Below are positions 3,342 through 44,818 of a stretch of DNA of 64,000 bases, piece by piece. Position numbers and translations under genes: made by a program. The stretch is from positions 1 through 64,000 of the IMG/VR virus record IMGVR_UViG_3300043786_000977. One strand, given 5' to 3'. How positions within the stretch are numbered: the first letter of the stretch is position 1; each line of letters begins with the position of its first letter. The notes below the pieces were generated by a model. That model had not been told where the DNA came from, searched no databases, and saw only the letters and a list, made by a program, of their open reading frames with translations.

Positions 3342-3343
3342 CC

Positions 3344-12869: not shown

Positions 12870-12909
12870 TGATTGGGCCAGAAACCCAGGATAAAAGAAG
12901 GAGCAGAAT

Positions 12910-16626: not shown

Positions 16627-16688
16627 GTATAGTCCAGCAATAATCTGATCGGCGCTGGGACGAAATACGAAATATTCTCCCACCACTT

Positions 16689-16747
16689 ACCCAGCCCGGA
16701 TGATACGCGGTGACACGCATCTATCGTCTGGGTTGGGTTTATTTTTA
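16689..16747 (+). terminator. Long-stem terminator after the tube gene
   Basis: acccagcccggatgata / tatcgtctgggttgggt 17-bp stem with G-U pairs, then ttattttt. Confidence 0.75.
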
Positions 16748-16760
16748 GGAGTAACGACGA

Positions 16761-19247: not shown

Positions 19248-19258
19248 CGAGGTATAAA

Positions 19259-27004: not shown

Positions 27005-27022
27005 TTGACGATAGGAGCATTT

Positions 27023-27724
27023 ATGCTTGAATATGACACATGGCAACAATCTCAGACACCTCAAAACCTTGCGCCGCTCATGCAAGCCTTGGATCCCGTG
27101 ATCAACGCTGAGATCCAGCGTTTCACCGGCCCGAAACCACTGCTGCGTGGGCGAGCGCGGGCCTTAGCAGTCAAGGCAATACGCTCGTACGATCCGACAG
27201 CCGGTGCACAATTGAAATCCTGGGTCGTTACCCAACTGCAACCCCTGTCACGTTATACACAGCAACTCAAACCCGTGCACGCGCCTGAGGTAGCCATTCG
27301 TCAGGCAGCTGAGGTGAATAGACAGAGACAGGAACTCAGCGAGGAACTGGGTTACGATCCGAGCTCTGAAGAGTTGGCAGATCAAACAGGATTGTCAGTC
27401 AAACGGATCAATTACGTTCAGAAGATCGTGCGGCCGACGATCGCAGAGGGTAGTATGTCTGAGACGGCCGAAGAGGACAACACGTCCACAGCGCCGGGTG
27501 TGTCTCAGCTGCATAAACTCTCGGTTGTGGAAGAAGCTGTCTTTGATTCGTTAAGTCCACGTGACCAGATGATCTTCGAGTGGAAAACAGGTAAACACGG
27601 TAAAGTGCAGTTAAGCAATCAGGAGATCGCGAAACGCCTGGGCGTAACGCCGGCACTCATAAGCCAACGCAGTCAGCAGATCGCATTACAGATTCAAGCG
27701 TTACATGAGAGAGGGATACTATAA
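27023..27724 (+). CDS. Phage-encoded sigma-70-family RNA polymerase sigma factor (regions 2-4)
   Basis: KAIRSYDPTAGAQLKSWV (region 2), ELSEELGYDPSSEELADQTG (region 3), LSPRDQMIF...SNQEIAKRLGVTPALISQ (region 4 HTH); ATG after AGGAG. Confidence 0.85.
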   Translation: MLEYDTWQQSQTPQNLAPLMQALDPVINAEIQRFTGPKPLLRGRARALAVKAIRSYDPTAGAQLKSWVVTQLQPLSRYTQQLKPVHAPEVAIRQAAEVNRQRQELSEELGYDPSSEELADQTGLSVKRINYVQKIVRPTIAEGSMSETAEEDNTSTAPGVSQLHKLSVVEEAVFDSLSPRDQMIFEWKTGKHGKVQLSNQEIAKRLGVTPALISQRSQQIALQIQALHERGIL

Positions 27725-30222: not shown

Positions 30223-31913
30223 TGCAACCAACTATTCCGGTCCGTAATTTCGTGTCGGATGGCGACACACTGTTTCAATGGATGGGTTCATTGTGGACTA
30301 CGCTCTACAGTGATCCAACATTCCTGCGTCGGCTCCAGCATGGGCGTGCGCTCGGTGCTGCACAGACGTATCTGGATTTAATGGAGGTCGCAGGCCTGTT
30401 GGACCGAAAAGCAGCACCTGTATTTCACCGTGAACGCTGGTATCCGTTAGTGATCCGAAAGTCACAGCAGGGGCAGGGCGATGCTGCGGCACTGACACTG
30501 AACATGGAACCCACACCTGTTTTAGGCCCACAAACTGATCCTGCGTTTCCGCCACGTACCGTATTCCAACTTGGCAGTAATGCAGCTTTTTCGCAGCTCG
30601 TGACATACCCATTAACCGTAACGCCGGCCCGTGTCGTGACGTGTTTAGTTGATAACCTGGTCGCACCGAACGTGCTGTTGATTAAGGACAGAGATTTCGT
30701 GATTCAAAACGGTACGGTCGTACTCTATAAGAAGAACGATCCTTTCGGTGAGGATTCTTCATTCCCGCTAACGGTCGTAACAACAGATACAACCACGGAT
30801 CAAGAGACCGTTTTATGGGCCTGTGACGTATTATTCGATCGTGATTACGTATACGATCACATCGGTTATGTGTTCGGTGTACGGATGAGTTCATCTGATT
30901 ATTTCAAGACACTACTCAACAGCATTTGGGATCTCACAACGTCTGGTGCGTCGCCCCGGTTATTCGCGGCAGCCATGGGCGCGCTCTGTAATGTACCTAC
31001 GGTCTTGACGGCTACGGAGACAGTCGAGACGCTTACGACGGATACCAACGGTGATCAGCTGGTTATCACAGATAAACAGGTTTACCGTATACCGGCCGAC
31101 GCGATACTGCGTACAGGGGTCGTGCCCGGCGCCGTCCTCGAGTACGGGGATTATCTCGATCAGGCTATAAAGATCTATCCAGCTATTTGTGATCCACGTC
31201 CGACGAAGTTGGCAGGTATCATCGAGTACGCGACTGATATACGGCACGATGTTCCGGTTGTCACATTACCCCCGGCCTTCTTTAAGACACCCCTGGCATA
31301 TGGCCTCAGCTTCTCCTGGGAGGCGGTACCGATCTATTGTTCAGGCTCGGATGCCAACGGTAATCCAAAGTTGTGGTTCCCGATCGAAGGTCTTGCAGCG
31401 GATGTCACTGCGTTCTGGGCAGACGTATGGACACGTTGTGAAACACAGGGCGTTTCACTTGAAGCTTGTTTTGATGGGTACTTAGATGATAGAGTACCTT
31501 ATCAGGAAATGGAAGGTACCTGGGGGCATATAGAGCCACTGGCTTTTATGTTGAAGAATCTGATTGGCGCGAATACAGTTATTGTGACACTGGATGTGAC
31601 GCAGTTGCGCACAGGAGCAAGGAAGCAACTAGTCCCGTTATTTGTGGATCTATTACAGGGTACATTACCGGCGTATGTACACCTGTGCTTTGTCGAACGA
31701 CGAACAACACCGGTGGAGCCGTATGAGGCGGGCGATAACGTGCGTGATGGTGTGACCTACACAGGTGCAACCTCAAGTGCGATCAGTGCCAAATACGTGA
31801 GCTTAAGTAGGGCGAGTTTAGGGCAGGTAGGCGGTCCGCATCCCGCACGTTTGACATACAAGGATCGGCCGCCAAGGATACGATGGATTCCAATTTGTAA
31901 GGATCAACTATGA
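30222..31913 (+). CDS. Baseplate wedge protein (gpI/gp7-like, inferred)
   Basis: Follows the J-like gene; LPAYVH C-terminal motif typical of gpI-type proteins. Confidence 0.45.
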   Translation: MQPTIPVRNFVSDGDTLFQWMGSLWTTLYSDPTFLRRLQHGRALGAAQTYLDLMEVAGLLDRKAAPVFHRERWYPLVIRKSQQGQGDAAALTLNMEPTPVLGPQTDPAFPPRTVFQLGSNAAFSQLVTYPLTVTPARVVTCLVDNLVAPNVLLIKDRDFVIQNGTVVLYKKNDPFGEDSSFPLTVVTTDTTTDQETVLWACDVLFDRDYVYDHIGYVFGVRMSSSDYFKTLLNSIWDLTTSGASPRLFAAAMGALCNVPTVLTATETVETLTTDTNGDQLVITDKQVYRIPADAILRTGVVPGAVLEYGDYLDQAIKIYPAICDPRPTKLAGIIEYATDIRHDVPVVTLPPAFFKTPLAYGLSFSWEAVPIYCSGSDANGNPKLWFPIEGLAADVTAFWADVWTRCETQGVSLEACFDGYLDDRVPYQEMEGTWGHIEPLAFMLKNLIGANTVIVTLDVTQLRTGARKQLVPLFVDLLQGTLPAYVHLCFVERRTTPVEPYEAGDNVRDGVTYTGATSSAISAKYVSLSRASLGQVGGPHPARLTYKDRPPRIRWIPICKDQL

Positions 31914-32518
31914 AAAAGATCAAGGACGCACAGAAAGGTATGCGCGGGTTCGTTCGCGGATACTGGTTCAATCCGGTAACGAACGAAATTAGGCATCGTT
32001 TCGAGCATCGAAACCAGTTGTCCTATGCGTGTTCTGACGCGCTGGCACAACTGATGGGTGGGAACGGGGCTTATGCACCTAGGTACATGGGGTTTATCTA
32101 CGGTGAACTAGAGACACCAACAATCGTGGCGCCAACGTCACGCAGTCAGACATGGACTGGTTTGAGTGAGGAATTGGCGGATCCCGGCGTAGTCGGGAAC
32201 ATCCAGATATCACCGATCACGTTGACACCTACCATAACGGTCGACGGGACCGCAGGGTATAGCGGGAACAGTGTGACATATAGCGCGCACACGCGCAGCG
32301 GCGGTTCTGGGAGTTATGGGTTCCCGTTAGTAAGTCCCTATGCCGACGCACTTGCAACGGGTGACTACCTCTACCACGCGATGCTAATCACACGGCTGAC
32401 TACTAGCGGGCTCGTGTATATCCCCATCGCTCGAGTCACACTGGCTGAGGATGATGCCTTCTTGGCAAAGCCAGACGGTTTCGAACTGGCCCTGGATTGG
32501 CAAATATCGTTCTTCTAA
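31910..32518 (+). CDS. Hypothetical baseplate/fibre-attachment protein
   Basis: 202 aa; HRNQL...YMGF...LDWQISF pattern seen in fibre-attachment genes; synteny. Confidence 0.4.
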   Translation: MKKIKDAQKGMRGFVRGYWFNPVTNEIRHRFEHRNQLSYACSDALAQLMGGNGAYAPRYMGFIYGELETPTIVAPTSRSQTWTGLSEELADPGVVGNIQISPITLTPTITVDGTAGYSGNSVTYSAHTRSGGSGSYGFPLVSPYADALATGDYLYHAMLITRLTTSGLVYIPIARVTLAEDDAFLAKPDGFELALDWQISFF

Positions 32519-32530
32519 GTGGAGGTCAAC

Positions 32531-35500
32531 ATGTCACTATGGGTTGCAGTTCATGGGTTACGAGACGGCGTCGATGTTTCGGCAGATACGTTCAATACGC
32601 CGATCTTCGAACTTGCCGAGCGTACGAACTATCTCTATAACCGCTTACAGGACCTGGCTGGACTATCGACTTTCGAGTCAGTACGTCTGTACAACGTCCC
32701 GCTAACCACAACGGGAGCACTAGCTCCCGAGATCAAGGACGTGGTATGTCTCGACAACGAGACCGGGTTGTACGTTAAAGCACAGGCGTCGATGAGTTTG
32801 CTGGACGAGTTCGTCGCCGCCGATTCAGCCTTTGCAATTGGTATCTTGATCAGTAAGACGGGAACAACAGGTACAGTGTTGATTCAAGGGCGCTTGCCGT
32901 TAACCACCAGTGGTGTTGCCTGGACATTGACAGATCTACTGGAGACCGACGAGGTCTTCCGGAATGGGCAGTATTATCTGTCGTCAATCGAACCTGGTAA
33001 ACTGACCTCTACACCGTCCGGACCTCTGATCTATCTCGGTTCCTTCATGCGTAGCGCGACGGACGCCACTAAGGGCGATTATGCCGTACTGAATCCACAG
33101 CATCGCGATACCGGTGAAAGCCACGTGCACCGTAGTTTCAAGTTGTACTCTCAGCCGGCTGGACGTCAATATGTCACGGGTACCACACCTGAGGATAAAC
33201 ATTATGTTATCGGGTTCCGTACCGCGGCCGTAGAAGCTGGGGCCGTGGATCCAGAAGACCGTATACCGCGCCTCGTTTGTGGTGGACGCTGGACGGGTAC
33301 TGCACCCGTCAATTATACGTTCTGGCTGTCCAACGACGGCCTATTGAGTACACCTTCGGAACTCTCGACCGCACCGACCGGTTTCAATGACGCGTATTTG
33401 CACTGGCAGTCGAGCGATCTGACAGAGGGTACCGGCGGACGCGGTGCGACGCGCATATGGTCATTTGAGTCCCCTGTCTCGATTGGTTCTTACGGTACCA
33501 CTGTAAGCCTGGAAAATCCGACGGGCGTCGTACCGCTTGAGGGCGATCAGTGGGATATACTATACGCCGTCGTCACGGACACTCCAGACAAACGTACATG
33601 GACCGTAGAGGTACCGACAGAAACTGTTGGTTGGCGCCCACGTCTGTGGCGTCAATACTTTGCTGATCATCCGGCTGTAGACGGCAAGTTCTCTATGATC
33701 CTTATGGGCGGACCCCACGTGCAGGCCGATAAACGCCTGGCAGATACGATCACAGTCGTGTGTGCAGAAATACACGCGTTTGACATGCTTTATCCTGCTG
33801 TGTGGGATACTACTGTCATTGGTGCGTACACGTTCGAGTACGTTGACGCAGGCGACACTGTAACAGACGGCAATATCGCAGTGCTACGCGCCGGCGACAT
33901 ATACGATCCGACGGGTACGTACGACAACCTGTTAACGGCTATTCGTGCCCTGGATGACAGCACGATAACGCCAGTTATCGACGTGACCGAAGCTACGTTC
34001 CTTGTAGGCACGCCGACATCGACCACCGTGACCCATCGTGGCGTTGTTGCATCAGCATTAACGGCGGGTGAAGGTACGGTGACTGTAGGCGCCGGTGACG
34101 CAGCCTTCCTGGTCTACGACCAGTACAATCACAACCTTGTTGCGAATTACGGTACCCTCTACTGGAACAATGCAGAGTTGTGGCAGTTCGCGGCATTGAC
34201 CAACGGACTGCAGATATTACTCGTGCCTTATGACAGTGACGGTACGGCAAGTACCAGTGCCACTGTTGAGGTCGGTGACTACTGGGCGTGCGACTTGGCT
34301 GATACGGCGCCCGGCGCCAACTTCGTCTATACAGTCGAGATGCATCAATCGTTGGTTGCCTACTACCCACCAATTCCGGCGAAGGTGGCGGCACTGGTAC
34401 TCAACGGTGTCGAGCTGGACAGTGCTGAATTCTTCGGGGACGCTGCAGTCTATAACCTGGCACCTGATTCGATTCACTGGTATTCTGATGCGTATAACAC
34501 GGTACCGTGGGCTACCGATTGGACCAGTATATCTGAACCGGGATCTGAACAACTGCAGCCACGCATGCTCCTGCATTTCGTGCGCGGTACCATCGGCAAT
34601 AGTGGTTACGTGACATCGTTACGCGCCGCACCTGATGCACCGATTCGTGTGCTACAGTGTGGTACTAACGAACCAGGCACAGTCGGCGATCTGATGTTGG
34701 ACCTTGACCTGGAACTGAGTACTCAGGACGCTAATGTCGTTGGTTACCAGGTGGTGAAGGCTACTGACGGCAGTAAACTGCGTCGTGGTCCCGTGGTCGA
34801 GCGTATCCGTGTCGGTGCTGGTTTGACGATGACCCAGTCGGGTAATGCGCCCGCCGGGCAGGGTATTGTGACACTCGGACTGTCGGCAGACGGCAGCGGT
34901 TTCGCCGGTGACTTTGAGGAAGTCGCGCTGGAGAATGCCAAGCAGGAATTGATTGGCATGTTCCCATATATACGGTTGCTCGGTTGGGAAACAGGCGGTA
35001 ACAATACACCTACTGGTTTCACTGCGAAGTTCCGTGTCCCGCATACACTTGATGAAACGGCCACGTACCGTGTTATCATATTTGCAACAATGTTCGGGGA
35101 AGAGGATGTGACGCTCGTAGCAGACATGCAGCTACCGCGTGCAGGATTACAGTTCACGTATTCAGTATTACCTGATGTGTTCGCACTTGCAGGGTCTGAT
35201 GTGAGTGATCCCCGTGGTACAGCATACGGCAACCTACAGGAAAATCTGATCGAACCTGATAACCCGCGAATGGCGGCAGTGGCTATGGGCGACCTAACCA
35301 TGGACCCCGTTTACAAATCATACGATCCTATGCTTCTGCATAACAACCCGTTACTGGCTTCTGTTCCGCGCCGCATGCTCAACGTCTTCGGAAACCCATT
35401 CCCGTCACCCGACGATCTGGAGTTGGATCCGGTTACAACAAGTATGCTCGGCGTGCGCGCAGGTAGTTTAGTTGCTATTCGTATCAGTCGTGCTGATCTC

Positions 35501-35578
35501 CTGGATCCGACTGACGAGTATACGGGCGCGCTCGGGTTCATCAGTTTGAGGTGGTCGTTAATCCGGGTCGAGGAATGA
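32531..35578 (+). CDS. Large tail fibre/baseplate protein
   Basis: N-terminal NTPIFELAERTNYL fibre motif and YYLSSIEPGKLT domain; ATG 32531 after GGAGG. Confidence 0.55.
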   Translation: MSLWVAVHGLRDGVDVSADTFNTPIFELAERTNYLYNRLQDLAGLSTFESVRLYNVPLTTTGALAPEIKDVVCLDNETGLYVKAQASMSLLDEFVAADSAFAIGILISKTGTTGTVLIQGRLPLTTSGVAWTLTDLLETDEVFRNGQYYLSSIEPGKLTSTPSGPLIYLGSFMRSATDATKGDYAVLNPQHRDTGESHVHRSFKLYSQPAGRQYVTGTTPEDKHYVIGFRTAAVEAGAVDPEDRIPRLVCGGRWTGTAPVNYTFWLSNDGLLSTPSELSTAPTGFNDAYLHWQSSDLTEGTGGRGATRIWSFESPVSIGSYGTTVSLENPTGVVPLEGDQWDILYAVVTDTPDKRTWTVEVPTETVGWRPRLWRQYFADHPAVDGKFSMILMGGPHVQADKRLADTITVVCAEIHAFDMLYPAVWDTTVIGAYTFEYVDAGDTVTDGNIAVLRAGDIYDPTGTYDNLLTAIRALDDSTITPVIDVTEATFLVGTPTSTTVTHRGVVASALTAGEGTVTVGAGDAAFLVYDQYNHNLVANYGTLYWNNAELWQFAALTNGLQILLVPYDSDGTASTSATVEVGDYWACDLADTAPGANFVYTVEMHQSLVAYYPPIPAKVAALVLNGVELDSAEFFGDAAVYNLAPDSIHWYSDAYNTVPWATDWTSISEPGSEQLQPRMLLHFVRGTIGNSGYVTSLRAAPDAPIRVLQCGTNEPGTVGDLMLDLDLELSTQDANVVGYQVVKATDGSKLRRGPVVERIRVGAGLTMTQSGNAPAGQGIVTLGLSADGSGFAGDFEEVALENAKQELIGMFPYIRLLGWETGGNNTPTGFTAKFRVPHTLDETATYRVIIFATMFGEEDVTLVADMQLPRAGLQFTYSVLPDVFALAGSDVSDPRGTAYGNLQENLIEPDNPRMAAVAMGDLTMDPVYKSYDPMLLHNNPLLASVPRRMLNVFGNPFPSPDDLELDPVTTSMLGVRAGSLVAIRISRADLLDPTDEYTGALGFISLRWSLIRVEE

Positions 35579-35593: not shown

Positions 35594-36508
35594 ATGCCAG
35601 CTATTTTACAACAAGAATGGTTGAATCAGAACGCAGGTCGTGCATATCCTTTTCAGGAGAACGCGACCCGCTACCCGCATGATGTTAACGGGCGCCAGTT
35701 GACATCGCTGGCATTGCCTAACTATGTCATCGTCGATATGATCTTTACGATGCCAGGACCGAGTGACCTACGGATGTACCTGGCACAGTTTGCACGGGCC
35801 GGTAATCTTTTGACCTGTGTCTTCCGTGAGACGGGTACAAACGCCATCGTAACCACGGTAACGTTTGATGCTAATACGCATGTACCAGGTACGGGGTATA
35901 GTCTGGCAGGTACCGCGGATTGGTTTGATGCCCGTGGCTGGTTGACGATCGGTGATCTACGGAAGTTAGCTGCTGACATACCCGAGGGGCTGTATAACTA
36001 CGAACCTGAGCAGACCCTGTTGGAAACGCGGGTTGTACGGCCGGCATTACGGGGTATCCGTAGTCTACGCGTAGTTAATCAGGATAACACGTCTGACTAT
36101 TTGTACGGCCACGTTAAGCTACTGGCAGGGGATAACGTGCGGCTCCAGTACGATCGAGAGCTAAACGGCGTATGGATTAATGCAGAGCCCAATGCGGGGT
36201 ACCGGGAAACATGTGACTGTGAATCACCAGCACAAACGAACCTGGTAAATACGGTCAACGGTATACCCGCCGAACACTTAACCATTGTCGGCGACGGAGA
36301 ATGTGTTGAAGTACGTACTGAAGGTGATAAGATCATCATTTCGGACAAATGCTCGGAACCGTGTTGCGGGTGTCCTGAACTGGAGTTCCTCACTGAGTCC
36401 GTGAAGGTGTTAGATGCAAGCCTGTCGCGGTTGGAATACTATTCGGAACAATTGGCCGAACGCATCTCAACGTTTGTAACTAACTTCGTGTTAACGGTGT
36501 CACGCTAA
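35594..36508 (+). CDS. Tail-associated paralogue 1 (EWLNQNAGRAYPF family)
   Basis: Shared N-terminal motif; CSEPCCGCPEL followed by a coiled coil. Confidence 0.6.
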   Translation: MPAILQQEWLNQNAGRAYPFQENATRYPHDVNGRQLTSLALPNYVIVDMIFTMPGPSDLRMYLAQFARAGNLLTCVFRETGTNAIVTTVTFDANTHVPGTGYSLAGTADWFDARGWLTIGDLRKLAADIPEGLYNYEPEQTLLETRVVRPALRGIRSLRVVNQDNTSDYLYGHVKLLAGDNVRLQYDRELNGVWINAEPNAGYRETCDCESPAQTNLVNTVNGIPAEHLTIVGDGECVEVRTEGDKIIISDKCSEPCCGCPELEFLTESVKVLDASLSRLEYYSEQLAERISTFVTNFVLTVSR

Positions 36509-37821
36509 TGGCAATCCAGGTTGAATATCTTAATTCAAACACAGCGATCGCCTTCCCATTCTGTGAGAACGCGACCGGTTTGAAGCGGTCTGTCGATGAT
36601 CTGTTCGCGATGCCTTTGGATGTTTTCGTTGACGCAGCCTTTGAAGTACCACATGACTTTGCAGCGACCAAGCGCCTCTATCTGATGGGCTGCTATTACG
36701 TGGACGCTGATACGCTCCTGGCATCGATTGGAGATGGCACATCGGCTGTCGTCGATGTGACGATTGTCGCTGCCGGCGTTTTTACTGCTGCGACAGCCGT
36801 GGATAATGGTGTAACGGCACGGTTGGTTGTCGACTCTGTTGCCTTGCGTACGTACTTGGCAGCCATGGAATCACCAATCGCTTACGGGACATCCCTGCCC
36901 TTCGAGCCTGGTACGCAGGCTGTTATTAATCCGCAGGTACTGTCGTTCGCGCTGTATAACAACGGCCCGCTACAACCACCAGAAGAAGGTACGTTGTCTG
37001 GTGATGTGCGCATCTTGAGTGGGTATAATGTCGGGGTCAATATCGACGTTATTGAAGACGATACAGTACCGATCGATATCAATGCACTCCCGGGTCTAGG
37101 TCTAGGTACCTTACCCTGCACAGAAGCTGATCCTCCGTTTACAAACGTACCGCCGGGCATGGTACCCAATAAAGGCAATATTCGGTTTGTGCCTGGAGAA
37201 GAGGGTTGTTACGTCGTGGTCGTTAACCCGACGAGCAATCTGATTCAGATTCAAGGACGGTGTCAGGCGTGCTGTACGTGTGAAGACATGACTGATATGC
37301 TCGGCGTTCTTAATGTGATCGGAACACGTATCCTGGCCGTGCAAACGTTACTGAACAGTGGGCGCGCTACTTATGAAGATGGGGTCACACGGTTCAACAA
37401 GTTTATCTCTACAGACTATACCACAGTGACAATGAAGGCAAATGGGATGCGTGGTTCAGATTGGGATACCGGGGATACCAATCGCGGTTCGCCTAATTGG
37501 GCGCGTGTTGTAATGAGTGTCAACAACCGCCGACCGAACCCTGCCGAGATTACATCGTGGAAGATGACGTTCTATAACCCAGCTGATGTTACTTATGAAG
37601 ACGTCTCGTGGTCGTACGCGGGTACAGGCGGCAAGACAGCGATGGGCGGTGCACTCCCCATACTCGCCGTTGATCGGAGTCTGGCAGTCACGTTACTGGT
37701 AAGTGTGACATTTCAACAGTGGCGGCAGAATCCACGGTGGTCTGCCCTGATTGAGGTCGAGGCGACCGACACGGTGACAGGTGTCAAAGACGTCATGACA
37801 CAGACGTTGGAGTTTTCATGA
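36508..37821 (+). CDS. Tail-associated paralogue 2 (EYLNSNTAIAFPF)
   Basis: Shared motif; CQACCTCED followed by a coiled coil and a beta domain. Confidence 0.6.
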   Translation: MAIQVEYLNSNTAIAFPFCENATGLKRSVDDLFAMPLDVFVDAAFEVPHDFAATKRLYLMGCYYVDADTLLASIGDGTSAVVDVTIVAAGVFTAATAVDNGVTARLVVDSVALRTYLAAMESPIAYGTSLPFEPGTQAVINPQVLSFALYNNGPLQPPEEGTLSGDVRILSGYNVGVNIDVIEDDTVPIDINALPGLGLGTLPCTEADPPFTNVPPGMVPNKGNIRFVPGEEGCYVVVVNPTSNLIQIQGRCQACCTCEDMTDMLGVLNVIGTRILAVQTLLNSGRATYEDGVTRFNKFISTDYTTVTMKANGMRGSDWDTGDTNRGSPNWARVVMSVNNRRPNPAEITSWKMTFYNPADVTYEDVSWSYAGTGGKTAMGGALPILAVDRSLAVTLLVSVTFQQWRQNPRWSALIEVEATDTVTGVKDVMTQTLEFS

Positions 37822-38513
37822 GCGCAAGTTATATCGAGTGGTGTAACGAGAATGAGGGACGTGGTTATCCAATCGCGGAAGCGGCCTCCCGTGTGGACGA
37901 TAACGGTACCCAGTTGCCGAGTGATATCTTGGCTGACCTGGGGTTGCTGTTACCATCAAACTACACGGGGTTGCGGCTTAGTTCATTGTATATCTCGTCC
38001 ACGCTCATATCGTTATCGATCAGTGCTGACGTCGGTGGTTTACTGACAGCAACATTCGCTAAGGCGTCCGTAGTACCCTATACTGCGTATGCGTTGACGC
38101 CGTACCCTGGCGTGGACGATGTTAGTGGTTGGGTGGTGTTCGGTAATTACAAACACCACGGTTCGGTGCCATTGTATGTGCGTTTCACTACCGCGGTACA
38201 GAGTGGTTTAGAGTTACGTACGGTCCGTGTTATACCGCCGCCCGGCGTGAAGCGTTTCCAGCGTGTTAATAATGATCCTAGCATCTACGCTACCGGGATT
38301 GTAGACTTCTTGCCCGGATCACAGTTTGTTGTCGAGGTAGATCCCGACAATCCGCAGAACATCATTGTACGCTTGCACGGGGACGTAAAGTCGCGGTATA
38401 TTGAACCTTGTACACGGCCGGCGGCAGCCGGGACATGTGCGGTACCGCCCTTGAGACGTATAAACGGGGTACCCCCAGATGCAGACGGGGTCATTACATT
38501 GAGGTTCGAATAA
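37818..38513 (+). CDS. Tail-associated paralogue 3 (EWCNENEGRGYPI)
   Basis: Shared motif; C-terminal INGVPPDADGVITL. Confidence 0.6.
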   Translation: MSASYIEWCNENEGRGYPIAEAASRVDDNGTQLPSDILADLGLLLPSNYTGLRLSSLYISSTLISLSISADVGGLLTATFAKASVVPYTAYALTPYPGVDDVSGWVVFGNYKHHGSVPLYVRFTTAVQSGLELRTVRVIPPPGVKRFQRVNNDPSIYATGIVDFLPGSQFVVEVDPDNPQNIIVRLHGDVKSRYIEPCTRPAAAGTCAVPPLRRINGVPPDADGVITLRFE

Positions 38514-39553
38514 TGCCAGTGGTACTATTAACCGAGTATGAGAACCAGAATCAGCGTCGCCATTACCCATTCGTCGATAACGCAACGATGAAGGATGATG
38601 ACGGGATGGCGCTACCCGCTGACTTCTTGGTTGATGCACACCTCTATCCACTGGATCCTATCGGGGGCGTCTACATTGCCAAGATTGAAGGCGGGACGAC
38701 GATTCAGTTTGCAGATACAGCGACGCGTAAGGTCTTTGGTGAGGCTGTCTACACCCCAGGCGCGCCTACTGCAGAGGTTGTGGAGACAGGGCTGTACGGA
38801 CGACAGGTAGGCTTGCTCGTCTTCGGTCCGGGGGTTGCTGATATCATTCGGGGACGTGGACAACGTACCTTTCGACCCGAAGCAACAACACTGACACCGA
38901 CGGCATATACTCCGATCAAACAGGTCGGCGTTCGTGGCGTACGGTTAGCTGACGGTACTCTGATAACAGGTGATATCAGTTTCGAGGGTCGGGACGGTGT
39001 GTTGATAACCAGTCGTATCGACGACGGCAAACATATGCTGCGTTTCGATGTGTTAGGGGTACCGCCGAATATGGAAGATTGCGGTGAAGATCCATTGATC
39101 TGTACCGTTGTCGTTGAACGGGTCCCCGGTAGTTGTTTCGTAACGAGCAAGTATGACGACTACACACTGGCCCTGACAGCAAATGGGTTGACCCTGGATG
39201 ATATCTGTGCAGCAGGCAAGGCACGCCGGCGCCCTAGTGACACGGATCCGTGCGCCGAGCCTGGACCCCCGCCGGTACCTACGCCACCAGGCGACGCAGC
39301 AACACAGCGGTTTGAGATTTGTGATATGCGGGTGGGTACGTTCATGATCGTAACGCCGTCAACGATCGGGAACCGTAATCCGATCTTTGTGAGTCCGTTG
39401 GAGGTTGCGACGATGCCTAATCGCCTGACACTACCCCCGATTACGACCGTAGACGACGCGACGGCCGCGGCTGAACGGTTCCGTTCACCAGAAGTAATGT
39501 CAGGCGGTCTGATTATTGGATTCCAAGGTATTGGAAAGGGCCAATTACCATGA
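38513..39553 (+). CDS. Tail-associated paralogue 4 (EYENQNQRRHYPF)
   Basis: Start at the TAATG overlap (38513) places the motif at the N-terminus, as in its neighbours. Confidence 0.6.
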   Translation: MPVVLLTEYENQNQRRHYPFVDNATMKDDDGMALPADFLVDAHLYPLDPIGGVYIAKIEGGTTIQFADTATRKVFGEAVYTPGAPTAEVVETGLYGRQVGLLVFGPGVADIIRGRGQRTFRPEATTLTPTAYTPIKQVGVRGVRLADGTLITGDISFEGRDGVLITSRIDDGKHMLRFDVLGVPPNMEDCGEDPLICTVVVERVPGSCFVTSKYDDYTLALTANGLTLDDICAAGKARRRPSDTDPCAEPGPPPVPTPPGDAATQRFEICDMRVGTFMIVTPSTIGNRNPIFVSPLEVATMPNRLTLPPITTVDDATAAAERFRSPEVMSGGLIIGFQGIGKGQLP

Positions 39554-40302
39554 TGACACGTACGCCAGAGTGGTTAAACGCAAACCGATACCGCCGGTAC
39601 CCATTCCGTGACGACACGAACTTGACCTGTACCGGGAGCCGGGCGTTGTCGAACGATGTGCTCCTAGATTGTCGCCTGGTCAGTTGTACGCGTGCACAGG
39701 CTGCGTTGTCGTTATTGGATGTTGAAGTTACGACCGGTCAGGCCTCTTTACTGTTTGCTTTCGGTTATGACAATTGCCTGTTCTGTGTGACTGTACCCGC
39801 CGCAGCTAGTTACCCGTATACGGTAACAGGTAGTTCGCTCGGACTGCAGTATACCCTTATCTTCGGCGAGGGCTGTAAGACGTTACTGGCATGGCCTGTG
39901 GGTATGTACAACCTGATAGAGTCGCCAGTCTTGCAGCCGGCCCTTACCGTGGTCCAGGACCGCCATCGTGTCGATACCGTGCGTGCCACGGGTGAAGGAC
40001 AAACAACGTTGTCCGGGCTTGTGTACATCGAACCGGGATATAACTGCGAACCAGTGGTCATGCCCAACAAGATCCGGTTATCGGCTGGTTTAGGTTACGG
40101 TGCAGGTCGTTATTGTAATTCACTCAGCGATGCTGTAAGATCTTGTGCTGAAGCCATCCTTTGGGTAAACGGACAGAACGCAGATGAAGCCGGTAACTTG
40201 CCCCTTGTCGGTGGCCCTGGTGTTGAGGTTGAAAGCCAACCTGATCAGAATCGAGTCGTGATACGTGGTAATACGTTACTAGAACAGACGAAGTGTGGAT
40301 AA
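39550..40302 (+). CDS. Tail-associated paralogue 5 (EWLNANRYRRYPF)
   Basis: Shared motif; C-terminal VNGQNADEAGNLPL. Confidence 0.6.
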   Translation: MMTRTPEWLNANRYRRYPFRDDTNLTCTGSRALSNDVLLDCRLVSCTRAQAALSLLDVEVTTGQASLLFAFGYDNCLFCVTVPAAASYPYTVTGSSLGLQYTLIFGEGCKTLLAWPVGMYNLIESPVLQPALTVVQDRHRVDTVRATGEGQTTLSGLVYIEPGYNCEPVVMPNKIRLSAGLGYGAGRYCNSLSDAVRSCAEAILWVNGQNADEAGNLPLVGGPGVEVESQPDQNRVVIRGNTLLEQTKCG

Positions 40303-42898
40303 TATGCGTGATCCTTTTCAAATGTCAGGTGATTGCCCGGTACTGGTCGTCGATCTCGGTATCCTGGAGAATCTGCCGATTTGCAGTATTCCTGGGTTCA
40401 CGAGTCCAACACACGCGATTCGGTTACCCGAACTAAACCCACCAGATATTGCAGCGCCGGATATCTGTTTCTGTATTAGTGTGGACGTACAAACCTCGAA
40501 GAACTATTTGGTTAATTCCTTCAGTGGACGCTGGTCACGTAAGACTGATGACTGTTGCGACGCGCAGTACAACCTGTCACTCAATCTAGATGTACCCTGT
40601 ATGCCGTTGAGCGTAGCAGCATCCCAAGCTGTCAAGATCACAACTGACACAGTGCCATATTTGAACGTCACACTCGGCAAGACTGCCACTGCCCCGGAGT
40701 GCGCCCTGAGTTTGTTCGTTTCGCTCGACATCCCTTGCATGCCCTTGAGTGTCAGGGTTTCCCATACAGTTGCGTTGAAAGATACCGCCGTACCACATCT
40801 TAAGGTTGACTTTGGCAAGACGGGTACTGCTTCTGTATGTGCTTTAAGCCTGTTCGTCTCTCTTGACATTCCGTGTATGCCCCTGAGTGTCAGGGTTTCC
40901 CATACAGTTGCGTTGAAAGACACCACCGTACCACATCTGCGGGTAGACTTCGGTAAGACCGCAACTGCCTCTGAGTGTGCTTTAAGCTTGTTTGTCTCGT
41001 TGGATATACCTTGCATGCCCTTGAGCGTCAGGGTATCGAAGACTGTCGCACTGACAGACGACATAGAACCACACCTCCGGGTGGACTTCGGGAAAACAGG
41101 CACTGCGTCGGAATGTGCGTTGAGTTTGTTTGTCTCGTTGGATATACCTTGCATGCCCTTGAGCGTTAGGGTCTCGAAGACCGTTGCGTTAACAGATGAC
41201 GCGGCGCCACATCTTAAGGTTGACTTCGGCAAGACTGGAACAGCTTCTGAATGTGCTCTGAGTTTGTTTGTCTCGCTCGACATTCCGTGTATGCCTTTAA
41301 GCGTCAAGGTCTCACATAATGTGGCGTTGACAGACGACGTAGAACCACATCTGCGGGTAGACTTCGGCAAGACTGGTACTGCCTCGGAGTGCGCGCTGAG
41401 TTTGTTTATTTCCCTAGACATCCCTTGTATGCCTTTAAGCGTCAGGGTATCGCACACCGTCGCATTGAAAGATACCGACGAGCCGCACCTACGTGTAGAC
41501 TTCGGTAAGACCGCAACTGCCTCAGAGTGTGCGCTGAGTTTGTTTATCTCCCTAGACATCCCCTGCATGCCTCTGAGCGTCAAGGTCTCACATAATGTGG
41601 CGTTGACAGACGACGTAGAACCGCATCTTCGGATTGACTTCGGGAAAACCGGAACAGCCTCTGAATGTGCGCTTAGTCTGTTCGTCTCGCTCGACATTCC
41701 GTGTATGCCCCTGAGCGTCCGGGTCTCGAAGACCGTCGTACTGACGGATGCCGTCGAACCGCACCTCCGGGTAGACTTCGGGAAGACCGGAACAGCTTCC
41801 GAATGTGCTCTCAGCCTGTTCGTCTCTCTCGACATTCCGTGTATGCCTTTAAGTGTCAGGGTCTCCCACACTATAGGGTTAACAGACGACGCAGAACCGC
41901 ACCTCCGGGTAGACTTCGGGAAGACCGGAACAGCTTCCGAATGTGCTCTCAGCCTGTTCGTCTCTCTCGACATTCCGTGTATGCCGCTGAGTGTCAGGGT
42001 ATCGAAGACTGTCACGTTGACCAATGACACCGAACCGCATCTGCAGGTAGACTTCGGGAAAACAGGTACTGCCTCGGAGTGCACGTTGAGCCTGTTCATT
42101 TCCCTAGACATACCCTGTATGCCCTTGAGTGTTACCGTATCACACACTGTTGCGTTGACCAATGACACTGAACCGCACCTACGGGTGGACTTCGGTAAAA
42201 CAGGTACTGCCTCGGAGTGTAAGTTGAGTCTGTTCGTCTCGCTCGACATCCCTTGCATGCCGTTGAGTATTACAGCAGATCAGGCCGTACAGATTACGAA
42301 CAGTGTAGCACCGTATTTGAACGTCGCACTCGGTAAGACTGGAACTGCTTCTGACTGCACGTTGAGTTTGTTCGTCTCGCTTGATATACCCTGTATGCCG
42401 TTCAGCATCGGTCCCGCGTGGGATCAGACAGATGTCCCGTTCGGTAGCAACGGCCTATTCAACATTAACCTCCAATTGGTTAAGACCAATAAGCAACTGC
42501 GCATATCTGGTACCCTGGGTATTACCGAGGACGACTGTTGCACGCCAACCCCATGGGCGCCCTCAATCATCGGCAGTACCCTTACTATTGCCAACCCTAT
42601 CTACCTCCGTTCGCCGAAATATTTTGTCCCTGCAGATCTTACCTATAGTTTGGTGGTGAGTGATGGTGCTGGCGATTACTACTGTGGCGTCAAGATCAAT
42701 GTCATTAACGGCACTATCGATCCCACGCTTCTCATATCCAAGACGCTTTCTGACGTCGTCTACACTAGTCTCGCTGCGGCTCACGCTGACGCCGACTACA
42801 TGCGACTGCTCGTCTGTGTCGTTACTTACGATGCAGTAAACTTTACAATTAAACTACGCTGCATCAACAGCGTACCGGAGTTGGGTAACTACGCTTAA
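40295..42898 (+). CDS. Cys-containing repeat protein, putative fibre shaft
   Basis: 867 aa with 13 tandem 46-aa units; start at 40295 (GTG) or 40304 (ATG). Confidence 0.7.
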   Translation: MDNMRDPFQMSGDCPVLVVDLGILENLPICSIPGFTSPTHAIRLPELNPPDIAAPDICFCISVDVQTSKNYLVNSFSGRWSRKTDDCCDAQYNLSLNLDVPCMPLSVAASQAVKITTDTVPYLNVTLGKTATAPECALSLFVSLDIPCMPLSVRVSHTVALKDTAVPHLKVDFGKTGTASVCALSLFVSLDIPCMPLSVRVSHTVALKDTTVPHLRVDFGKTATASECALSLFVSLDIPCMPLSVRVSKTVALTDDIEPHLRVDFGKTGTASECALSLFVSLDIPCMPLSVRVSKTVALTDDAAPHLKVDFGKTGTASECALSLFVSLDIPCMPLSVKVSHNVALTDDVEPHLRVDFGKTGTASECALSLFISLDIPCMPLSVRVSHTVALKDTDEPHLRVDFGKTATASECALSLFISLDIPCMPLSVKVSHNVALTDDVEPHLRIDFGKTGTASECALSLFVSLDIPCMPLSVRVSKTVVLTDAVEPHLRVDFGKTGTASECALSLFVSLDIPCMPLSVRVSHTIGLTDDAEPHLRVDFGKTGTASECALSLFVSLDIPCMPLSVRVSKTVTLTNDTEPHLQVDFGKTGTASECTLSLFISLDIPCMPLSVTVSHTVALTNDTEPHLRVDFGKTGTASECKLSLFVSLDIPCMPLSITADQAVQITNSVAPYLNVALGKTGTASDCTLSLFVSLDIPCMPFSIGPAWDQTDVPFGSNGLFNINLQLVKTNKQLRISGTLGITEDDCCTPTPWAPSIIGSTLTIANPIYLRSPKYFVPADLTYSLVVSDGAGDYYCGVKINVINGTIDPTLLISKTLSDVVYTSLAAAHADADYMRLLVCVVTYDAVNFTIKLRCINSVPELGNYA
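40586..42400 (+). repeat. 13 full plus 1 partial tandem 138-bp coding repeats
   Basis: Unit LDIPCMPLSVRVSxTVALxDxxEPHLRVDFGKTGTASECALSLFVS; variation is mostly synonymous. Confidence 0.95.
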
Positions 42899-42910
42899 CA
42901 AGGGGATATT

Positions 42911-44818
42911 ATGACTGTTCGACAATATGCCGCAAGTGTGGTGATCAGTGCGGGTATCGCAATAACTGGCGTTATGTGGTATCAGAACCGTATGCCTTAT
43001 ATAGCTGGTGAGGATATTGCGGCACTAACTGCTGATGCCTATACTGTGCGTAGTGTTGTGATAAGCCCTGCTATTCGACAAGGTTATATGAGAGATGCAT
43101 GGACATACGGGAATGAAGATTATTGGTATCCCGGTGCTCCCGGTACTTGGGACTGGGTTTACAAACAGGTAGGCGAGACAACTATTACTGTGTTCAGAGC
43201 GTCATCTGATATTCAGAATTTATGTGCATTGGTGCAAGATTGTTTCATAGACGCAGATGCACCGGGCGCCCTTTTGGGAGGGACTTATCAGCGTTATTAT
43301 CTAGACCCCCGTTGCCTAAGCGGGGCGGCTGACGAATTGACAATGAAAATAACCCCACAATGGTCTAACACCCCAACATATACGTTATACATACCCGCCG
43401 GGAATTATAAGACAAACATAGTATTTTCAGGGACTATAACCAACATTGATGCTGATGGCGTAACACTATTAGATAGGATGACTACAGGGACTAATAAGTT
43501 TGGTGCACCGTCCGTTTATCTTTTTAGCGCCGCAGTAAATACGCCAATAAGCAGACTAGGCAGTATTTACAGGACGCCTCCACCCGTTTGGCCAGATATG
43601 ACGAGGTTTGATGGAAGGCAGAACTACACCGCATTTACAAACCGCCTGAATGGTTGCGCATCGTGGTGGACGTATGCAGGTATCTCACCTATATCCTATA
43701 TGCTGGAGCCACTCGAAGTATTGCGAGTTACTGATTGTAATCCTGTAAATCTGTCCTACGCATATATTGACTGGCGCAGTTACGAACTAGGGAAGAGTCC
43801 AGATAAAACGTTTACAGACCCCGGGGTTGGTGTCAGTGTGCGTCCAACTGCGTTTATAACGACAAACGGACTCAATGTTATCAGAAAAGTTCTGACGAAT
43901 ATGGTTAGAACTGTTGAATTCTCGCCAGTGTGTGTTGGCACAAATATAACATTCACGCATACAGCAACATACGGTGTAGAGTCTACCAATGGGTTTAGTA
44001 ATTCAGACCCAATCAACTACATTCCATTGGTGACTAATACACTTACTGCAAGCACAAATGCGTTGACTACCACGCTAACTGGGTATCAATTTTATTCTGC
44101 GGAGGAACGGTTATACAATCGACTTTACAAATATCCGTGGGCACCGACAAATTATGTGAGTTCTGCAGATTCGTCTGTGATCTGGACGCATTATAGTTTC
44201 TCACCTACTAATATCCCAATCTCGATGTATACGAACGGATTTGTTAAACGTGTTAGATTTTATGTTACCTGTGACTCGACTACTCCGATGCTCTGGTATC
44301 CACGGCTTAGTGTGTATTCCGACGCTGAAGTTACTTTAACTGGATTAACAGCGTATACCCGTGCAAGGCTGAACGAATACGAGTCCTATACTAATGACTA
44401 TCCGATAGTTGTAAATAATATGTTGGCTGATATAATGCCTGTTGGTGTCCCTAGTGACAATTACCGTTCTTGGGTATGGGTTACAGCTTTGAGTAATAGG
44501 GGGAAAAGTTTTGACAACTTCGCAACCAACCAGATATGGAACCTAATTGGTGATACGACTAACACACTGACAACCCCTGTATTTACGTTTACTAATGGGA
44601 AGTCCCAACTAGGTGATGTATCATTCAGAACGCCTACACAAATGGTAGAGGCGACAGGCCCAGAGATTGATCTTAAGTATCTAAAGGCTTATTGGCTATA
44701 CCACAAAATGCAAATAATGAAGACTATGATGGTAGTTGACTGGAATATCCCATTAATGAGCAATGGGGGCACGAATGTGTATACCCCTGCGTGGGCTACA
44801 ACCAACTCGGTGCCCTGA
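42911..44818 (+). CDS. T-N-rich, aromatic-rich protein with N-terminal hydrophobic segment (putative exported or receptor-binding protein)
   Basis: 635 aa; AASVVISAGIAITGVMWY at the N-terminus; about 19 TN dipeptides; visibly more AT-rich than flanking genes. Confidence 0.6.
   Translation: MTVRQYAASVVISAGIAITGVMWYQNRMPYIAGEDIAALTADAYTVRSVVISPAIRQGYMRDAWTYGNEDYWYPGAPGTWDWVYKQVGETTITVFRASSDIQNLCALVQDCFIDADAPGALLGGTYQRYYLDPRCLSGAADELTMKITPQWSNTPTYTLYIPAGNYKTNIVFSGTITNIDADGVTLLDRMTTGTNKFGAPSVYLFSAAVNTPISRLGSIYRTPPPVWPDMTRFDGRQNYTAFTNRLNGCASWWTYAGISPISYMLEPLEVLRVTDCNPVNLSYAYIDWRSYELGKSPDKTFTDPGVGVSVRPTAFITTNGLNVIRKVLTNMVRTVEFSPVCVGTNITFTHTATYGVESTNGFSNSDPINYIPLVTNTLTASTNALTTTLTGYQFYSAEERLYNRLYKYPWAPTNYVSSADSSVIWTHYSFSPTNIPISMYTNGFVKRVRFYVTCDSTTPMLWYPRLSVYSDAEVTLTGLTAYTRARLNEYESYTNDYPIVVNNMLADIMPVGVPSDNYRSWVWVTALSNRGKSFDNFATNQIWNLIGDTTNTLTTPVFTFTNGKSQLGDVSFRTPTQMVEATGPEIDLKYLKAYWLYHKMQIMKTMMVVDWNIPLMSNGGTNVYTPAWATTNSVP

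What the first reader, a model, noticed from the sequence alone, without database searches (positions are those of the whole stretch)
35594..40302. Five tandem paralogues with an E-[WY]-x-N-x-N-x-x-R-x-Y-P-F N-terminal motif and Cys clusters
Seen: five consecutive, overlapping-coupled genes start EWLNQNAGRAYPF, EYLNSNTAIAFPF, EWCNENEGRGYPI, EYENQNQRRHYPF and EWLNANRYRRYPF. They share an (LP)xx(I/F/V)(L/V)xD segment and a later G-x-V-x-(L/I)-x-x-G-x-N segment. Two carry CxxCCxC followed by a coiled coil. Inference: a hetero-oligomeric fibre-branching or baseplate periphery complex built by serial duplication, with metal- or disulfide-stapled joints. I do not recognise the family.
Basis: partly seen in the sequence, partly recalled or inferred. 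Interest (0 to 1): 0.6.

Follow-up and report, generated by a model that had tools for sequence, protein, structure and literature searches.

The report
Five-paralogue phage baseplate-side gene array
Five neighbouring genes of an uncultivated 209-kb tailed phage are ancient copies of one protein that no database names; they sit where outer baseplate or tail-fibre adaptor parts are encoded, but how they assemble is not yet known.

Summary
Five back-to-back + strand genes (35594-40302) join at TAATG or ATGA overlaps. Each opens, 5-8 codons in, with E-[WY]-x-N-x-N-x4-[YF]-P-[FI]; the motif occurs five times in six frames and never in shuffles. They are true paralogues over about 225 residues (g1 vs g3 profiles: 99.8 %, E 3e-28).

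The window belongs to a 208,908-bp virus record with terminal repeats. IMG/VR holds 153 related loci. Of 80 fetched, 55 have five copies and 22 have four, mostly in the same order. Each position forms its own branch on a tree (g5 less cleanly), so the duplications predate this phage group.

A PCCxC cysteine cluster before a helix occurs in 55/55 first and 54/55 second genes, and never in genes 3-5.

Pfam, PHROGs, NCBIfam, PDB sequences, PDB folds, BFVD and the ESM Atlas give no family. The only fold signal is a weak C2-like beta-sandwich (Z 4.3-4.9). A profile search finds 5,483 unnamed metagenomic clusters, and 50,697 isolate phage records give no match.

The array lies just after a conserved baseplate module and before variable genes. 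I read the five as non-redundant outer-baseplate or fibre-adaptor subunits. Hetero-oligomer formation and cysteine stapling remain inference; the one complex prediction gave no answer.

The parts
35594..36508 (+). g1, 304 aa. The most conserved paralogue: N-terminal arm, C2-like beta-sandwich, beta-hairpin region, cysteine cluster and a C-terminal 42-residue helix.
   Evidence: ORF. AlphaFold2 mean pLDDT 82, above 90 for residues about 20-150, helix 261-302. 119 relatives, all unnamed. Seven conserved cysteines, six invariant and C207 near-invariant.
36508..37821 (+). g2, 437 aa. The same core, a CxxCCxC cluster, a helical stretch and a further C-terminal region of about 140 aa.
   Evidence: C234, C252, C255, C256 and C258 are invariant in 12 orthologues.
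37818..38513 (+). g3, 231 aa. The minimal core only; it ends just after the h-N-G-x-x-x-D-x-x-G strand.
   Evidence: AlphaFold2 mean pLDDT 82.
38513..39553 (+). g4, 346 aa (ATG at 38513). Core plus a proline-rich linker and a C-terminal extension of about 100 aa.
39550..40302 (+). g5, 250 aa. Core only, with ten cysteines.
35615..35653 (+). N-terminal motif of g1 (EWLNQNAGRAYPF). The equivalent motifs lie at 36523-36561 (g2), 37836-37874 (g3), 38534-38572 (g4) and 39568-39606 (g5).
   Evidence: Regex scan: five hits in six frames, none in 50 shuffles. N, N, R, Y and P are the most conserved positions across 324 family members of all five classes. The arm is modelled with low confidence in the monomers.
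36350..36373 (+). g1 cysteine cluster, C253-x3-C257-C258-x-C260, immediately before the helix.
   Evidence: Invariant in 68 g1 homologues. CCxC is present in 55 of 55 position-1 proteins.
36374..36499 (+). g1 C-terminal amphipathic helix (residues 261-302) with a 3-4 hydrophobic spacing; a candidate coiled coil.
   Evidence: AlphaFold2 helix 261-302. Hydrophobic pattern. The only fold matches to this part are coiled coils, Z about 5.9.
37261..37281 (+). g2 cysteine cluster, C252-x2-C255-C256-x-C258.
   Evidence: CCxC is present in 54 of 55 position-2 proteins and in none of 165 proteins at positions 3-5.
28615..35578 (+). Context: the conserved upstream module, made of a Baseplate_J-like wedge protein (28615-30222) and proteins of 563, 202 and 1019 aa.
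   Evidence: Pfam Baseplate_J E 3.5e-8 and phrog_6 baseplate wedge subunit E 2.4e-21. tblastn finds these proteins upstream of g1 in 68, 70, 13 and 73 of 80 related loci.
40295..44818 (+). Context: variable downstream genes, an 867-aa protein made of 46-residue tandem repeats and a 635-aa protein.
   Evidence: Tandem repeat of 138 bp, 11.6 copies. Homologues found in only 6 and 0 of 80 related loci.

Best explanation
The five genes encode five non-redundant paralogous virion proteins. I place them in the outer baseplate or fibre-adaptor layer of a large uncultivated myovirus.

All five share a core of about 225 residues:
- a flexible N-terminal arm carrying the near-invariant N-x-N-x-x-R-x-Y-P motif;
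- a C2-like beta-sandwich;
- a thinner beta-hairpin region containing G-x-V-x-L-x-x-G-x-N, a conserved cysteine and an (I/V)-N-G-x-x-x-D-x-x-G strand.

Proposed mechanism (inferred, not shown):
1. The arm and sandwich dock each paralogue at its own position on the conserved wedge proteins encoded just upstream. The conserved N-terminal tail of the adenovirus fibre docks on penton base in a comparable way.
2. The C-terminal ends point outward. There they carry nothing (g3 and g5 here), a short extension (g4), or a cysteine-knotted helix (g1 and g2) that oligomerises as a coiled coil stapled by disulfides or a metal.
3. In relatives the same positions carry long variable extensions, so the core acts as a fixed socket for changeable distal parts.
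4. Tight translational coupling delivers the five together.

Shown here: paralogy, ancient duplication, strict co-retention and order, the module boundary position, and the restriction of the cysteine cluster to g1 and g2.

Inferred: presence in the virion, contacts between the five, oligomeric state, and the chemistry of the cysteines.
For: Paralogy over the whole core. There are only five copies in the genome.

The stop and start codons overlap at all four junctions.

The array is widely conserved. IMG/VR holds 153 related loci. Of the 80 fetched, 55 have five detectable copies and 22 have four. The order g1-g2-g3-g4-g5 is the commonest pattern.

The duplications are old. On the tree g1, g2, g3 and g4 are each one clan, with support 90/86, 98/90, 100/99 and 100/99. 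Orthologues are 26-46 % identical, against about 20-27 % between paralogues.

Genomic setting:
- a myovirus tail module with a sheath-like protein and Baseplate_J;
- upstream genes conserved in 68-73 of 80 loci (the 202-aa protein in 13);
- downstream genes conserved in 0-6 of 80 loci.

Lengths differ by position. g1 is constant at about 297-325 aa. The position-3 protein ranges from 219 to 1228 aa and the position-4 protein from 252 to 882 aa. Conserved N-termini with variable C-termini are the usual layout of baseplate-anchored fibres.

CCxC followed by a helix occurs in 55/55 g1 and 54/55 g2 proteins and in 0/165 others.

Both AlphaFold2 models show the same domain order.
Against: There is no direct evidence that the proteins are in the virion.

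No solved baseplate or fibre protein matches by sequence or by fold.

Only residues about 30-128 of the core, and the g1 C-terminal helix, were effectively tested against known folds.

The prediction of g1 with g2 scored 0.05-0.07, against a mark of 0.32. The tool counts that as no answer.

In one relative an IS605-type OrfB gene sits between g1 and g2, so translational coupling is not obligatory.

On the core-domain tree g1 and g2 lie on opposite sides of a branch with 99/90 support. The shared cysteine-helix module therefore need not mean that they are a pair.
Confidence: 0.55

Rival explanations
1. There are five independent homotrimeric fibres or spikes. Each uses the same N-terminal anchor module to bind equivalent sites on the baseplate. 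The paralogues do not contact one another; they differ only in what they display.
For: The core is conserved while C-terminal extensions vary in positions 2-4 across the clade. g1 ends in a coiled-coil-like helix. The (I/V)-N-G-x-x-x-D-x-x-G strand recalls, from my own memory and not tested here, repeats of trimeric tail fibres.
Against: Independent receptor-binding fibres are usually gained, lost and swapped. Here four or five copies in the same order persist down to about 26 % identity. In this phage g3 and g5 are bare cores with nothing to display. The cysteine cluster is confined to exactly two neighbouring paralogues.
Confidence: 0.3
2. They are proteins that act during assembly or infection but are not part of the virion. 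Examples would be tail-fibre assembly scaffolds or chaperones, or cysteine-cluster metalloproteins (Fe-S or Zn) with a catalytic or redox role.
For: No structural protein family matches. g1 has seven conserved cysteines, six of them invariant. Near-invariant polar residues (N, N, R, Y, D) could line a ligand site.
Against: The genes are embedded in the tail and baseplate gene block and coupled to it. The models show an elongated multi-domain beta architecture with an unstructured arm and a terminal helix, not a compact enzyme. Five paralogues of 231-437 aa would be unusual for chaperones. The cysteine cluster is absent from three of the five.
Confidence: 0.1
3. The resemblance is a chance short motif or an artefact of ORF calling.
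For: None was found.
Against: The profile-profile comparison gives E 3.3e-28 over 210 columns. The motif occurs five times in the window and never in 50 shuffles. Orthologues of each gene occur in dozens of independent contigs.
Confidence: 0.01

Closest known systems
Branched receptor-binding complex of Ackermannviridae phages (CBA120 TSP1-4), built on T4 gp10-like XD domains (PMC8825819, PMC11414711)
   Same: Both have several neighbouring genes for tail-distal proteins whose N-terminal parts are related to each other. In CBA120 those parts serve to anchor and join the proteins at the baseplate while the C-terminal parts vary. The genomic place, at the baseplate edge, is also the same.
   Different: No sequence or fold match to T4 gp10, T4 gp9 or TSP4-N was found. 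Here the shared part is one module of about 225 residues present in all five, not XD jellyrolls. Three of the five proteins carry little or nothing beyond that module. A cysteine cluster with a helix replaces catalytic tailspike bodies. Whether they bind each other is not shown.
T4 baseplate periphery genes 9-12; gp10, gp11 and gp12 are thought to share ancestry (my own knowledge of Leiman et al. 2006, not checked here)
   Same: Both are tandem genes for outer-baseplate proteins that arose by duplication. All are needed together, and they link the wedge to the fibres.
   Different: The folds differ as far as they could be tested. There are five paralogues rather than three. The conserved N-terminal peptide motif and the cysteine-cluster helix have no T4 counterpart that I know of.
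Adenovirus fibre N-terminal tail (FNPVYPY) docking on penton base (PMC8156859)
   Same: Both have a short, strongly conserved, extended N-terminal peptide rich in N, P and Y ahead of the folded part. In adenovirus it docks the fibre on the capsid. This is an analogy for how the arm might work here.
   Different: The proteins are unrelated and the viruses differ. The resemblance is one of principle only. Docking is not shown here.
Cysteine knots or rings at the ends of extracellular coiled coils and triple helices: collagen III, laminin, fibrinogen, COMP (my own knowledge)
   Same: Both have a tight cluster of cysteines, including an adjacent CC pair, placed directly at the start of a heptad-repeat helix. 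In many relatives g2 also has another cysteine about 45-50 residues later, at the helix end.
   Different: These are unrelated proteins. Phage assembly takes place in the reducing cytoplasm, so metal binding is equally possible. Neither was tested.
C2 domains
   Same: The beta-sandwich of both models aligns best with C2 domains: Z 4.3-4.9, rmsd 2.3-3.4 A over about 80 residues.
   Different: The scores lie below the level at which a shared fold is reliable. No Pfam C2 match was found. Nothing suggests calcium or lipid binding.

Membership tests
T4 gp10-like / XD-domain fibre-branching adaptors (T4 gp10, gp9; CBA120 TSP2 and TSP4; G7C gp66) | Sequence-profile similarity to gp10 or XD domains | tested here: not met
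   Profiles of g1 (A2) and of the whole superfamily core (A5) find no phage protein among 177,635 PDB sequences at E up to 10. Pfam, PHROGs and NCBIfam give nothing.
T4 gp10-like / XD-domain fibre-branching adaptors (T4 gp10, gp9; CBA120 TSP2 and TSP4; G7C gp66) | XD beta-jellyroll fold | tested here: inconclusive
   No gp10, gp9 or TSP4-N chain appears among the listed matches of either model. However, only residues about 30-128 were effectively compared. The hairpin region at 150-255 could not be folded and searched on its own.
T4 gp10-like / XD-domain fibre-branching adaptors (T4 gp10, gp9; CBA120 TSP2 and TSP4; G7C gp66) | Trimer that binds other fibre trimers | not tested
Baseplate-anchored tail fibres or spikes in general | Gene sits at the distal end of the baseplate gene block | tested here: met
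   Sheath-like and Baseplate_J genes lie upstream. The array falls at the boundary between conserved and variable genes.
Baseplate-anchored tail fibres or spikes in general | Conserved N-terminal anchor with a variable C-terminal part | tested here: met
   The core is found in every class. Position-3 proteins range from 219 to 1228 aa and position-4 proteins from 252 to 882 aa, while g1 stays at 297-325 aa. g3 and g5 of this window have no distal part.
Baseplate-anchored tail fibres or spikes in general | Presence in the virion | not testable with these tools
   No cultivated relative exists. tblastn of g1, g3 and g5 against 50,697 isolate phage records gives no match.
C2 domain | Eight-stranded beta-sandwich of C2 topology | tested here: inconclusive
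   The best matches of both models are C2 domains, but at Z 4.3-4.9. By the tool's own guidance that is below a reliable level.
C2 domain | Match to the Pfam C2 models | tested here: not met
   No Pfam hit for any of the five or for 68 g1 homologues.
Cysteine-stapled coiled coils (collagen III, laminin, COMP type) | Cysteine cluster directly flanking a heptad-repeat helix | tested here: met
   C253, C257, C258 and C260 come just before helix 261-302 in g1. The same layout is seen in g2 and across the clade.
Cysteine-stapled coiled coils (collagen III, laminin, COMP type) | Inter-chain disulfides (or a bound metal) in the assembled oligomer | not testable with these tools
   This needs protein chemistry or a solved structure.

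The most novel reading that the evidence does not exclude
The five paralogues assemble with each other into one pseudo-symmetric adaptor complex per baseplate wedge. Their identical N-terminal arms interlock, and g1 and g2 are joined by a coiled coil locked by a disulfide or metal cysteine knot. This would be a baseplate-periphery architecture with no solved counterpart, used by a very large group of uncultivated phages of about 190-226 kb.
Probability: 0.25. Interest if true: 0.7.

Novelty: new variant of a known kind. Interest (0 to 1): 0.45.

Why it matters
The family is large: 5,483 clusters at 50 % identity match the core profile. It is absent from Pfam, PHROGs, NCBIfam, the PDB and all 50,697 isolate phage genomes searched. 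That leaves a sizeable blind spot in the annotation of environmental phages of about 200 kb.

It marks the boundary between the conserved baseplate and the variable host-range genes. A profile for it would therefore help locate receptor-binding genes in such genomes.

If the five do form a mixed, cysteine-stapled adaptor, it would add a new solution to a general problem: how complex tails attach and diversify their fibres.

Tried and rejected
- Complex prediction of full-length g1 with g2, using my own alignments, scored ipSAE 0.05 and 0.07 against a mark of 0.32. The verdict was 'no answer', so it counts neither for nor against binding.
- Pfam, PHROGs and NCBIfam scans of the five proteins, and of all 68 g1 homologues, gave nothing consistent.
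- PDB profile searches with A2 and A5 gave only chance-level rows.
- Foldseek against PDB and BFVD, VIA-align wide and second-look searches, and the ESM Atlas shape search gave no significant match. The g1 wide search was swamped by its long helix.
- The ESM Atlas feature search gave no usable hit.
- tblastn of g1, g3 and g5, and megablast of the region, against isolate phages found no match.
- The nearest isolates by sheath similarity are Salmonella phage Arash and Vibrio phages D69, D181 and D148, at 28-30 % identity over the C-terminal 43 % of the sheath. Arash has no match to the family profile.
- Host inference from prokaryote genomes failed. The six hits are contigs binned into MAGs labelled with several unrelated bacterial groups, most likely mis-binned phage DNA.
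- The promoter and terminator scan was at the shuffle level.
- Not done for lack of fold jobs: folding the hairpin region (g1 150-255) or the C-terminal parts of g2 and g4 alone, and homotrimer predictions.
- The sequencing-run and read-laying tools were not used.


Full report
**1. What is in the sequence**

The window is bases 1-64000 of a 208,908-bp virus record with direct terminal repeats, rated complete. Nearly all long ORFs are on the + strand. Recognisable genes are few:
- a 1049-aa protein whose C-terminal part matches tail sheath (phrog_279, E 5.8e-13);
- a sigma-70-like factor at 27005-27724;
- a Baseplate_J / baseplate wedge protein at 28615-30222 (Pfam E 3.5e-8; phrog_6 E 2.4e-21).

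After Baseplate_J come proteins of 563, 202 and 1019 aa, and then the five genes of the finding:

| Gene | Coordinates | Length |
|---|---|---|
| g1 | 35594-36508 | 304 aa |
| g2 | 36508-37821 | 437 aa |
| g3 | 37818-38513 | 231 aa |
| g4 | 38513-39553 | 346 aa |
| g5 | 39550-40302 | 250 aa |

For g4 the ATG at 38513 is the sensible start, because it overlaps the g3 stop. The ORF lister's upstream TTG at 38408 is probably not used. The four internal junctions read TAATG, ATGA, TAATG and ATGA.

**2. Checking the observation**

The N-terminal motif, written E[WY]xNxNx4[YF]P[FI], occurs exactly five times in all six frames of the window. Each hit lies 5-8 codons after one of the five starts, and 50 shuffles gave none. 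The LPxxhhxD segment is in all five, with an invariant Asp.

Two details need correcting. GxVx(L/I)xxGxN is complete in g1, g2 and g5 only. The cysteine cluster is CxxCCxC in g2 but CxxxCCxC in g1.

The similarity is not limited to the motif:
- phmmer g1-g3: E 6e-15 over 220 residues.
- phmmer g1-g2: E 4e-11 to 9e-11 over about 270 residues.
- Other pairs: about 1e-4 to 1e-9, except g2-g5, which was not significant (E 0.18). All E-values are for a tiny five-protein database.
- Family profiles of g1 (68 sequences) and g3 (39 sequences): hhalign probability 99.8 %, E 3.3e-28 over 210 columns, which is nearly all of g3.

A profile of the five finds only these five genes in the whole genome.

**3. 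Relatives and age of the duplication**

A word-based search with g1 found 119 proteins, none with an informative name, on metagenomic contigs of up to 211 kb. g3 found 38 and g2 found 6 including itself.

IMG/VR holds 153 loci that encode a g1 relative. I fetched 80 of them. The longest contigs, likely near-complete genomes, are about 190-226 kb. A profile of the five window proteins finds five copies in 55 loci and four in 22. Best-hit classification gives the order g1-g2-g3-g4-g5 as the commonest pattern; most other patterns are the same array with one copy too diverged to classify.

Orthologues are 26-46 % identical to the window's proteins, against about 20-27 % between paralogues.

I built a maximum-likelihood tree of 68 core domains:

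| Class | Result | Support |
|---|---|---|
| g1 | one clan | 90/86 |
| g2 | one clan | 98/90 |
| g3 | one clan | 100/99 |
| g4 | one clan | 100/99 |
| g5 | two pieces next to g2; one origin not excluded | - |

A branch with 99/90 support separates (g2+g5) from (g1+g3+g4). The five-fold duplication therefore predates the radiation of this phage group, and every copy has been kept since.

**4. Anatomy**

Across 324 members of all classes, the most conserved positions (g1 numbering) are:
- N11, N13, R16, Y18 and P19 in the arm;
- D48;
- G115 and G120;
- G172, V174, G179 and N181;
- C207;
- (I/V)221-N222-G223, with a Gly about six residues later.

AlphaFold2 models of g1 and g3, each from its own family alignment, both have mean pLDDT 82. 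Both show:
- a poorly defined N-terminal arm (pLDDT below 50 for the first roughly 11 residues);
- a confident beta-sandwich (pLDDT above 90 for roughly residues 20-150 in g1 and 20-130 in g3);
- a less confident run of beta-hairpins.

g1 ends in a 42-residue helix (261-302) with a regular 3-4 hydrophobic spacing. Within the g1 family, C209, C237, C253, C257, C258 and C260 are invariant and C207 is nearly so. g2 keeps C234, C252, C255, C256 and C258.

Across the 55 loci with five copies, CCxC occurs in 55/55 first and 54/55 second proteins. It occurs in none of the 165 proteins at positions 3-5. In many distant relatives g2 has a further cysteine about 45-50 residues after the cluster, at the end of the helical stretch.

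Lengths behave differently by position. g1 is constant at 297-325 aa. Position 3 ranges from 219 to 1228 aa and position 4 from 252 to 882 aa. The core is therefore a fixed N-terminal unit, and the C-termini are free to vary.

**5. Comparison with what is known**

No hit was found in Pfam, PHROGs or NCBIfam for the five proteins or for all 68 g1 homologues. PDB profile searches with the g1 family and with the superfamily core gave nothing.

Fold searches gave no significant match. These covered Foldseek against PDB and BFVD, VIA-align against 48,161 PDB representatives and as a second look, and the ESM Atlas.

The only recurring signal is that the sandwich of both models aligns best to C2 domains. 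The values are Z 4.3-4.9 and rmsd 2.3-3.4 A over about 80 residues, at g1 42-128 and g3 34-116. These ranges correspond to each other in the profile alignment. This supports 'same fold in both paralogues' but is too weak to claim a C2 relationship. Only the sandwich and the g1 helix were effectively tested; the hairpin region was not.

An exhaustive profile search of 1.84 billion cluster representatives found 5,483 proteins at E up to 1e-3, of which 4,018 are at 1e-10 and 991 at 1e-30. The ten whose clusters I looked up are unnamed or 'hypothetical'.

No isolate phage among 50,697 records matches g1, g3 or g5 by tblastn. The nearest isolates by sheath are Salmonella phage Arash and three Vibrio phages, at 28-30 % identity over the C-terminal 43 % of the sheath. 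Arash lacks the family.

**6. Genomic setting**

tblastn of the window's neighbouring proteins against the 80 loci gave the following:

| Gene | Side of array | Found in (of 80 loci) |
|---|---|---|
| sigma factor | upstream | 59 |
| Baseplate_J protein | upstream | 68 |
| 563-aa protein | upstream | 70 |
| 202-aa protein | upstream | 13 |
| 1019-aa protein | upstream | 73 |
| 867-aa repeat protein | downstream | 6 |
| 635-aa protein | downstream | 0 |

The array therefore sits at the edge between the conserved baseplate block and a variable block. In tailed phages such a variable block usually holds host-recognition genes.

**7. How it most likely works**

I commit to this reading. The five are non-redundant virion proteins of the outer baseplate or fibre-adaptor layer.
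- The arm and sandwich dock each one at its own site on the conserved wedge proteins.
- The C-terminal ends point outward.
- g1 and g2 oligomerise through a helix whose start is stapled by the cysteine cluster, either as disulfides after release or through a bound metal.
- In relatives the same sockets carry long distal extensions.

Shown: paralogy, age, co-retention, order, coupling, the module boundary, and the restriction of the cysteine-helix module to g1 and g2.

Inferred: virion location, contacts, oligomeric state and cysteine chemistry.

My confidence:

| Claim | Confidence |
|---|---|
| Structural baseplate-periphery role | about 0.55 |
| Contacts among the five | lower, about 0.4 |
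| Cysteine cluster is a staple | about 0.5 |

The main rival, at 0.3, is five independent homotrimeric fibres that share one anchor module. The strict retention of all copies argues against it, as does the fact that g3 and g5 here are bare cores. A non-virion role (0.1) and chance (0.01) are unlikely.

**8. Closest known systems**

In working principle the nearest are two systems:
- the branched tailspike complex of Ackermannviridae, built on T4 gp10-like XD domains (PMC8825819, PMC11414711);
- the T4 gene 9-12 group.

Membership in the gp10/XD family is not supported. The sequence test was not met and the fold test was inconclusive.

The conserved N-terminal peptide recalls the FNPVYPY tail by which adenovirus fibres dock on penton base (PMC8156859). 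A cysteine cluster at the start of a helix recalls the cysteine knots of collagen III, laminin or COMP; this is my own knowledge and an analogy only.

**9. Verdict**

The feature is real, well conserved and unnamed. It is a new variant of a known kind of thing, namely duplicated outer-baseplate or fibre-adaptor proteins. Interest is moderate (0.45). It would rise if a mixed, cysteine-stapled complex were demonstrated.

The read-mapping tools were not used.

Noticed in passing
window 40295-42898 (+): The 867-aa protein just downstream consists largely of 11.6 tandem copies of a 138-bp (46-residue) unit, each with two cysteines (motif ...ECALSLFVSLDIPCMPLSV...). The 584-aa antisense ORF at 40504-42258 is probably a by-product of the repeat. 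Homologues occur in only 6 of 80 related loci.
   Followed up: partly
window 27005-27724 (+): A sigma-70-like factor gene (Sigma70_r3 E 5.6e-9; phrog_351) lies inside the tail and baseplate gene block. It is conserved at that place in 59 of 80 related loci.
   Followed up: partly
L007 11096-12148 (same contig as L008; IMGVR_UViG_3300031707_000001): In a relative with 46 % identity, an IS605-type OrfB / Cas12f-like (TnpB) gene is inserted between g1 and g2, breaking the translational coupling. In the same locus a NUMOD3-containing ORF sits between the 204-aa and 997-aa genes.
   Followed up: no
L023, L041, L078 (between about 10.9 kb and 17 kb of each locus): In some relatives about 6 kb separates g1 from the next detectable paralogue. 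This may be an insertion, or a very large or very diverged g2.
   Followed up: no
window 12910-16059 (+): The sheath-like protein is unusually long at 1049 aa. Only its C-terminal 450 residues or so resemble any isolate phage protein: Salmonella phage Arash and Vibrio phages D69, D181 and D148, at 28-30 % identity.
   Followed up: partly
L089-L094: Relatives of g1 occur on contigs binned into MAGs labelled Phycisphaerales, Synechococcaceae, Methylococcales, Aquaspirillum and Gemmatimonadota, plus one unclassified bacterium. These are probably phage contigs mis-binned into the MAGs, so they give no host assignment.
   Followed up: no
window 1-12900 and 16111-20038: Nine of ten larger proteins from these stretches (the head and neck side and the tail genes just after the sheath) have no PHROG match at E 1e-3. 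This underlines how far the phage is from described ones.
   Followed up: no
window 40295-40306: The start of the 867-aa gene is ambiguous. It is either GTG at 40295, overlapping g5 by 8 bases, or ATG at 40304, one base after the g5 stop.
   Followed up: no
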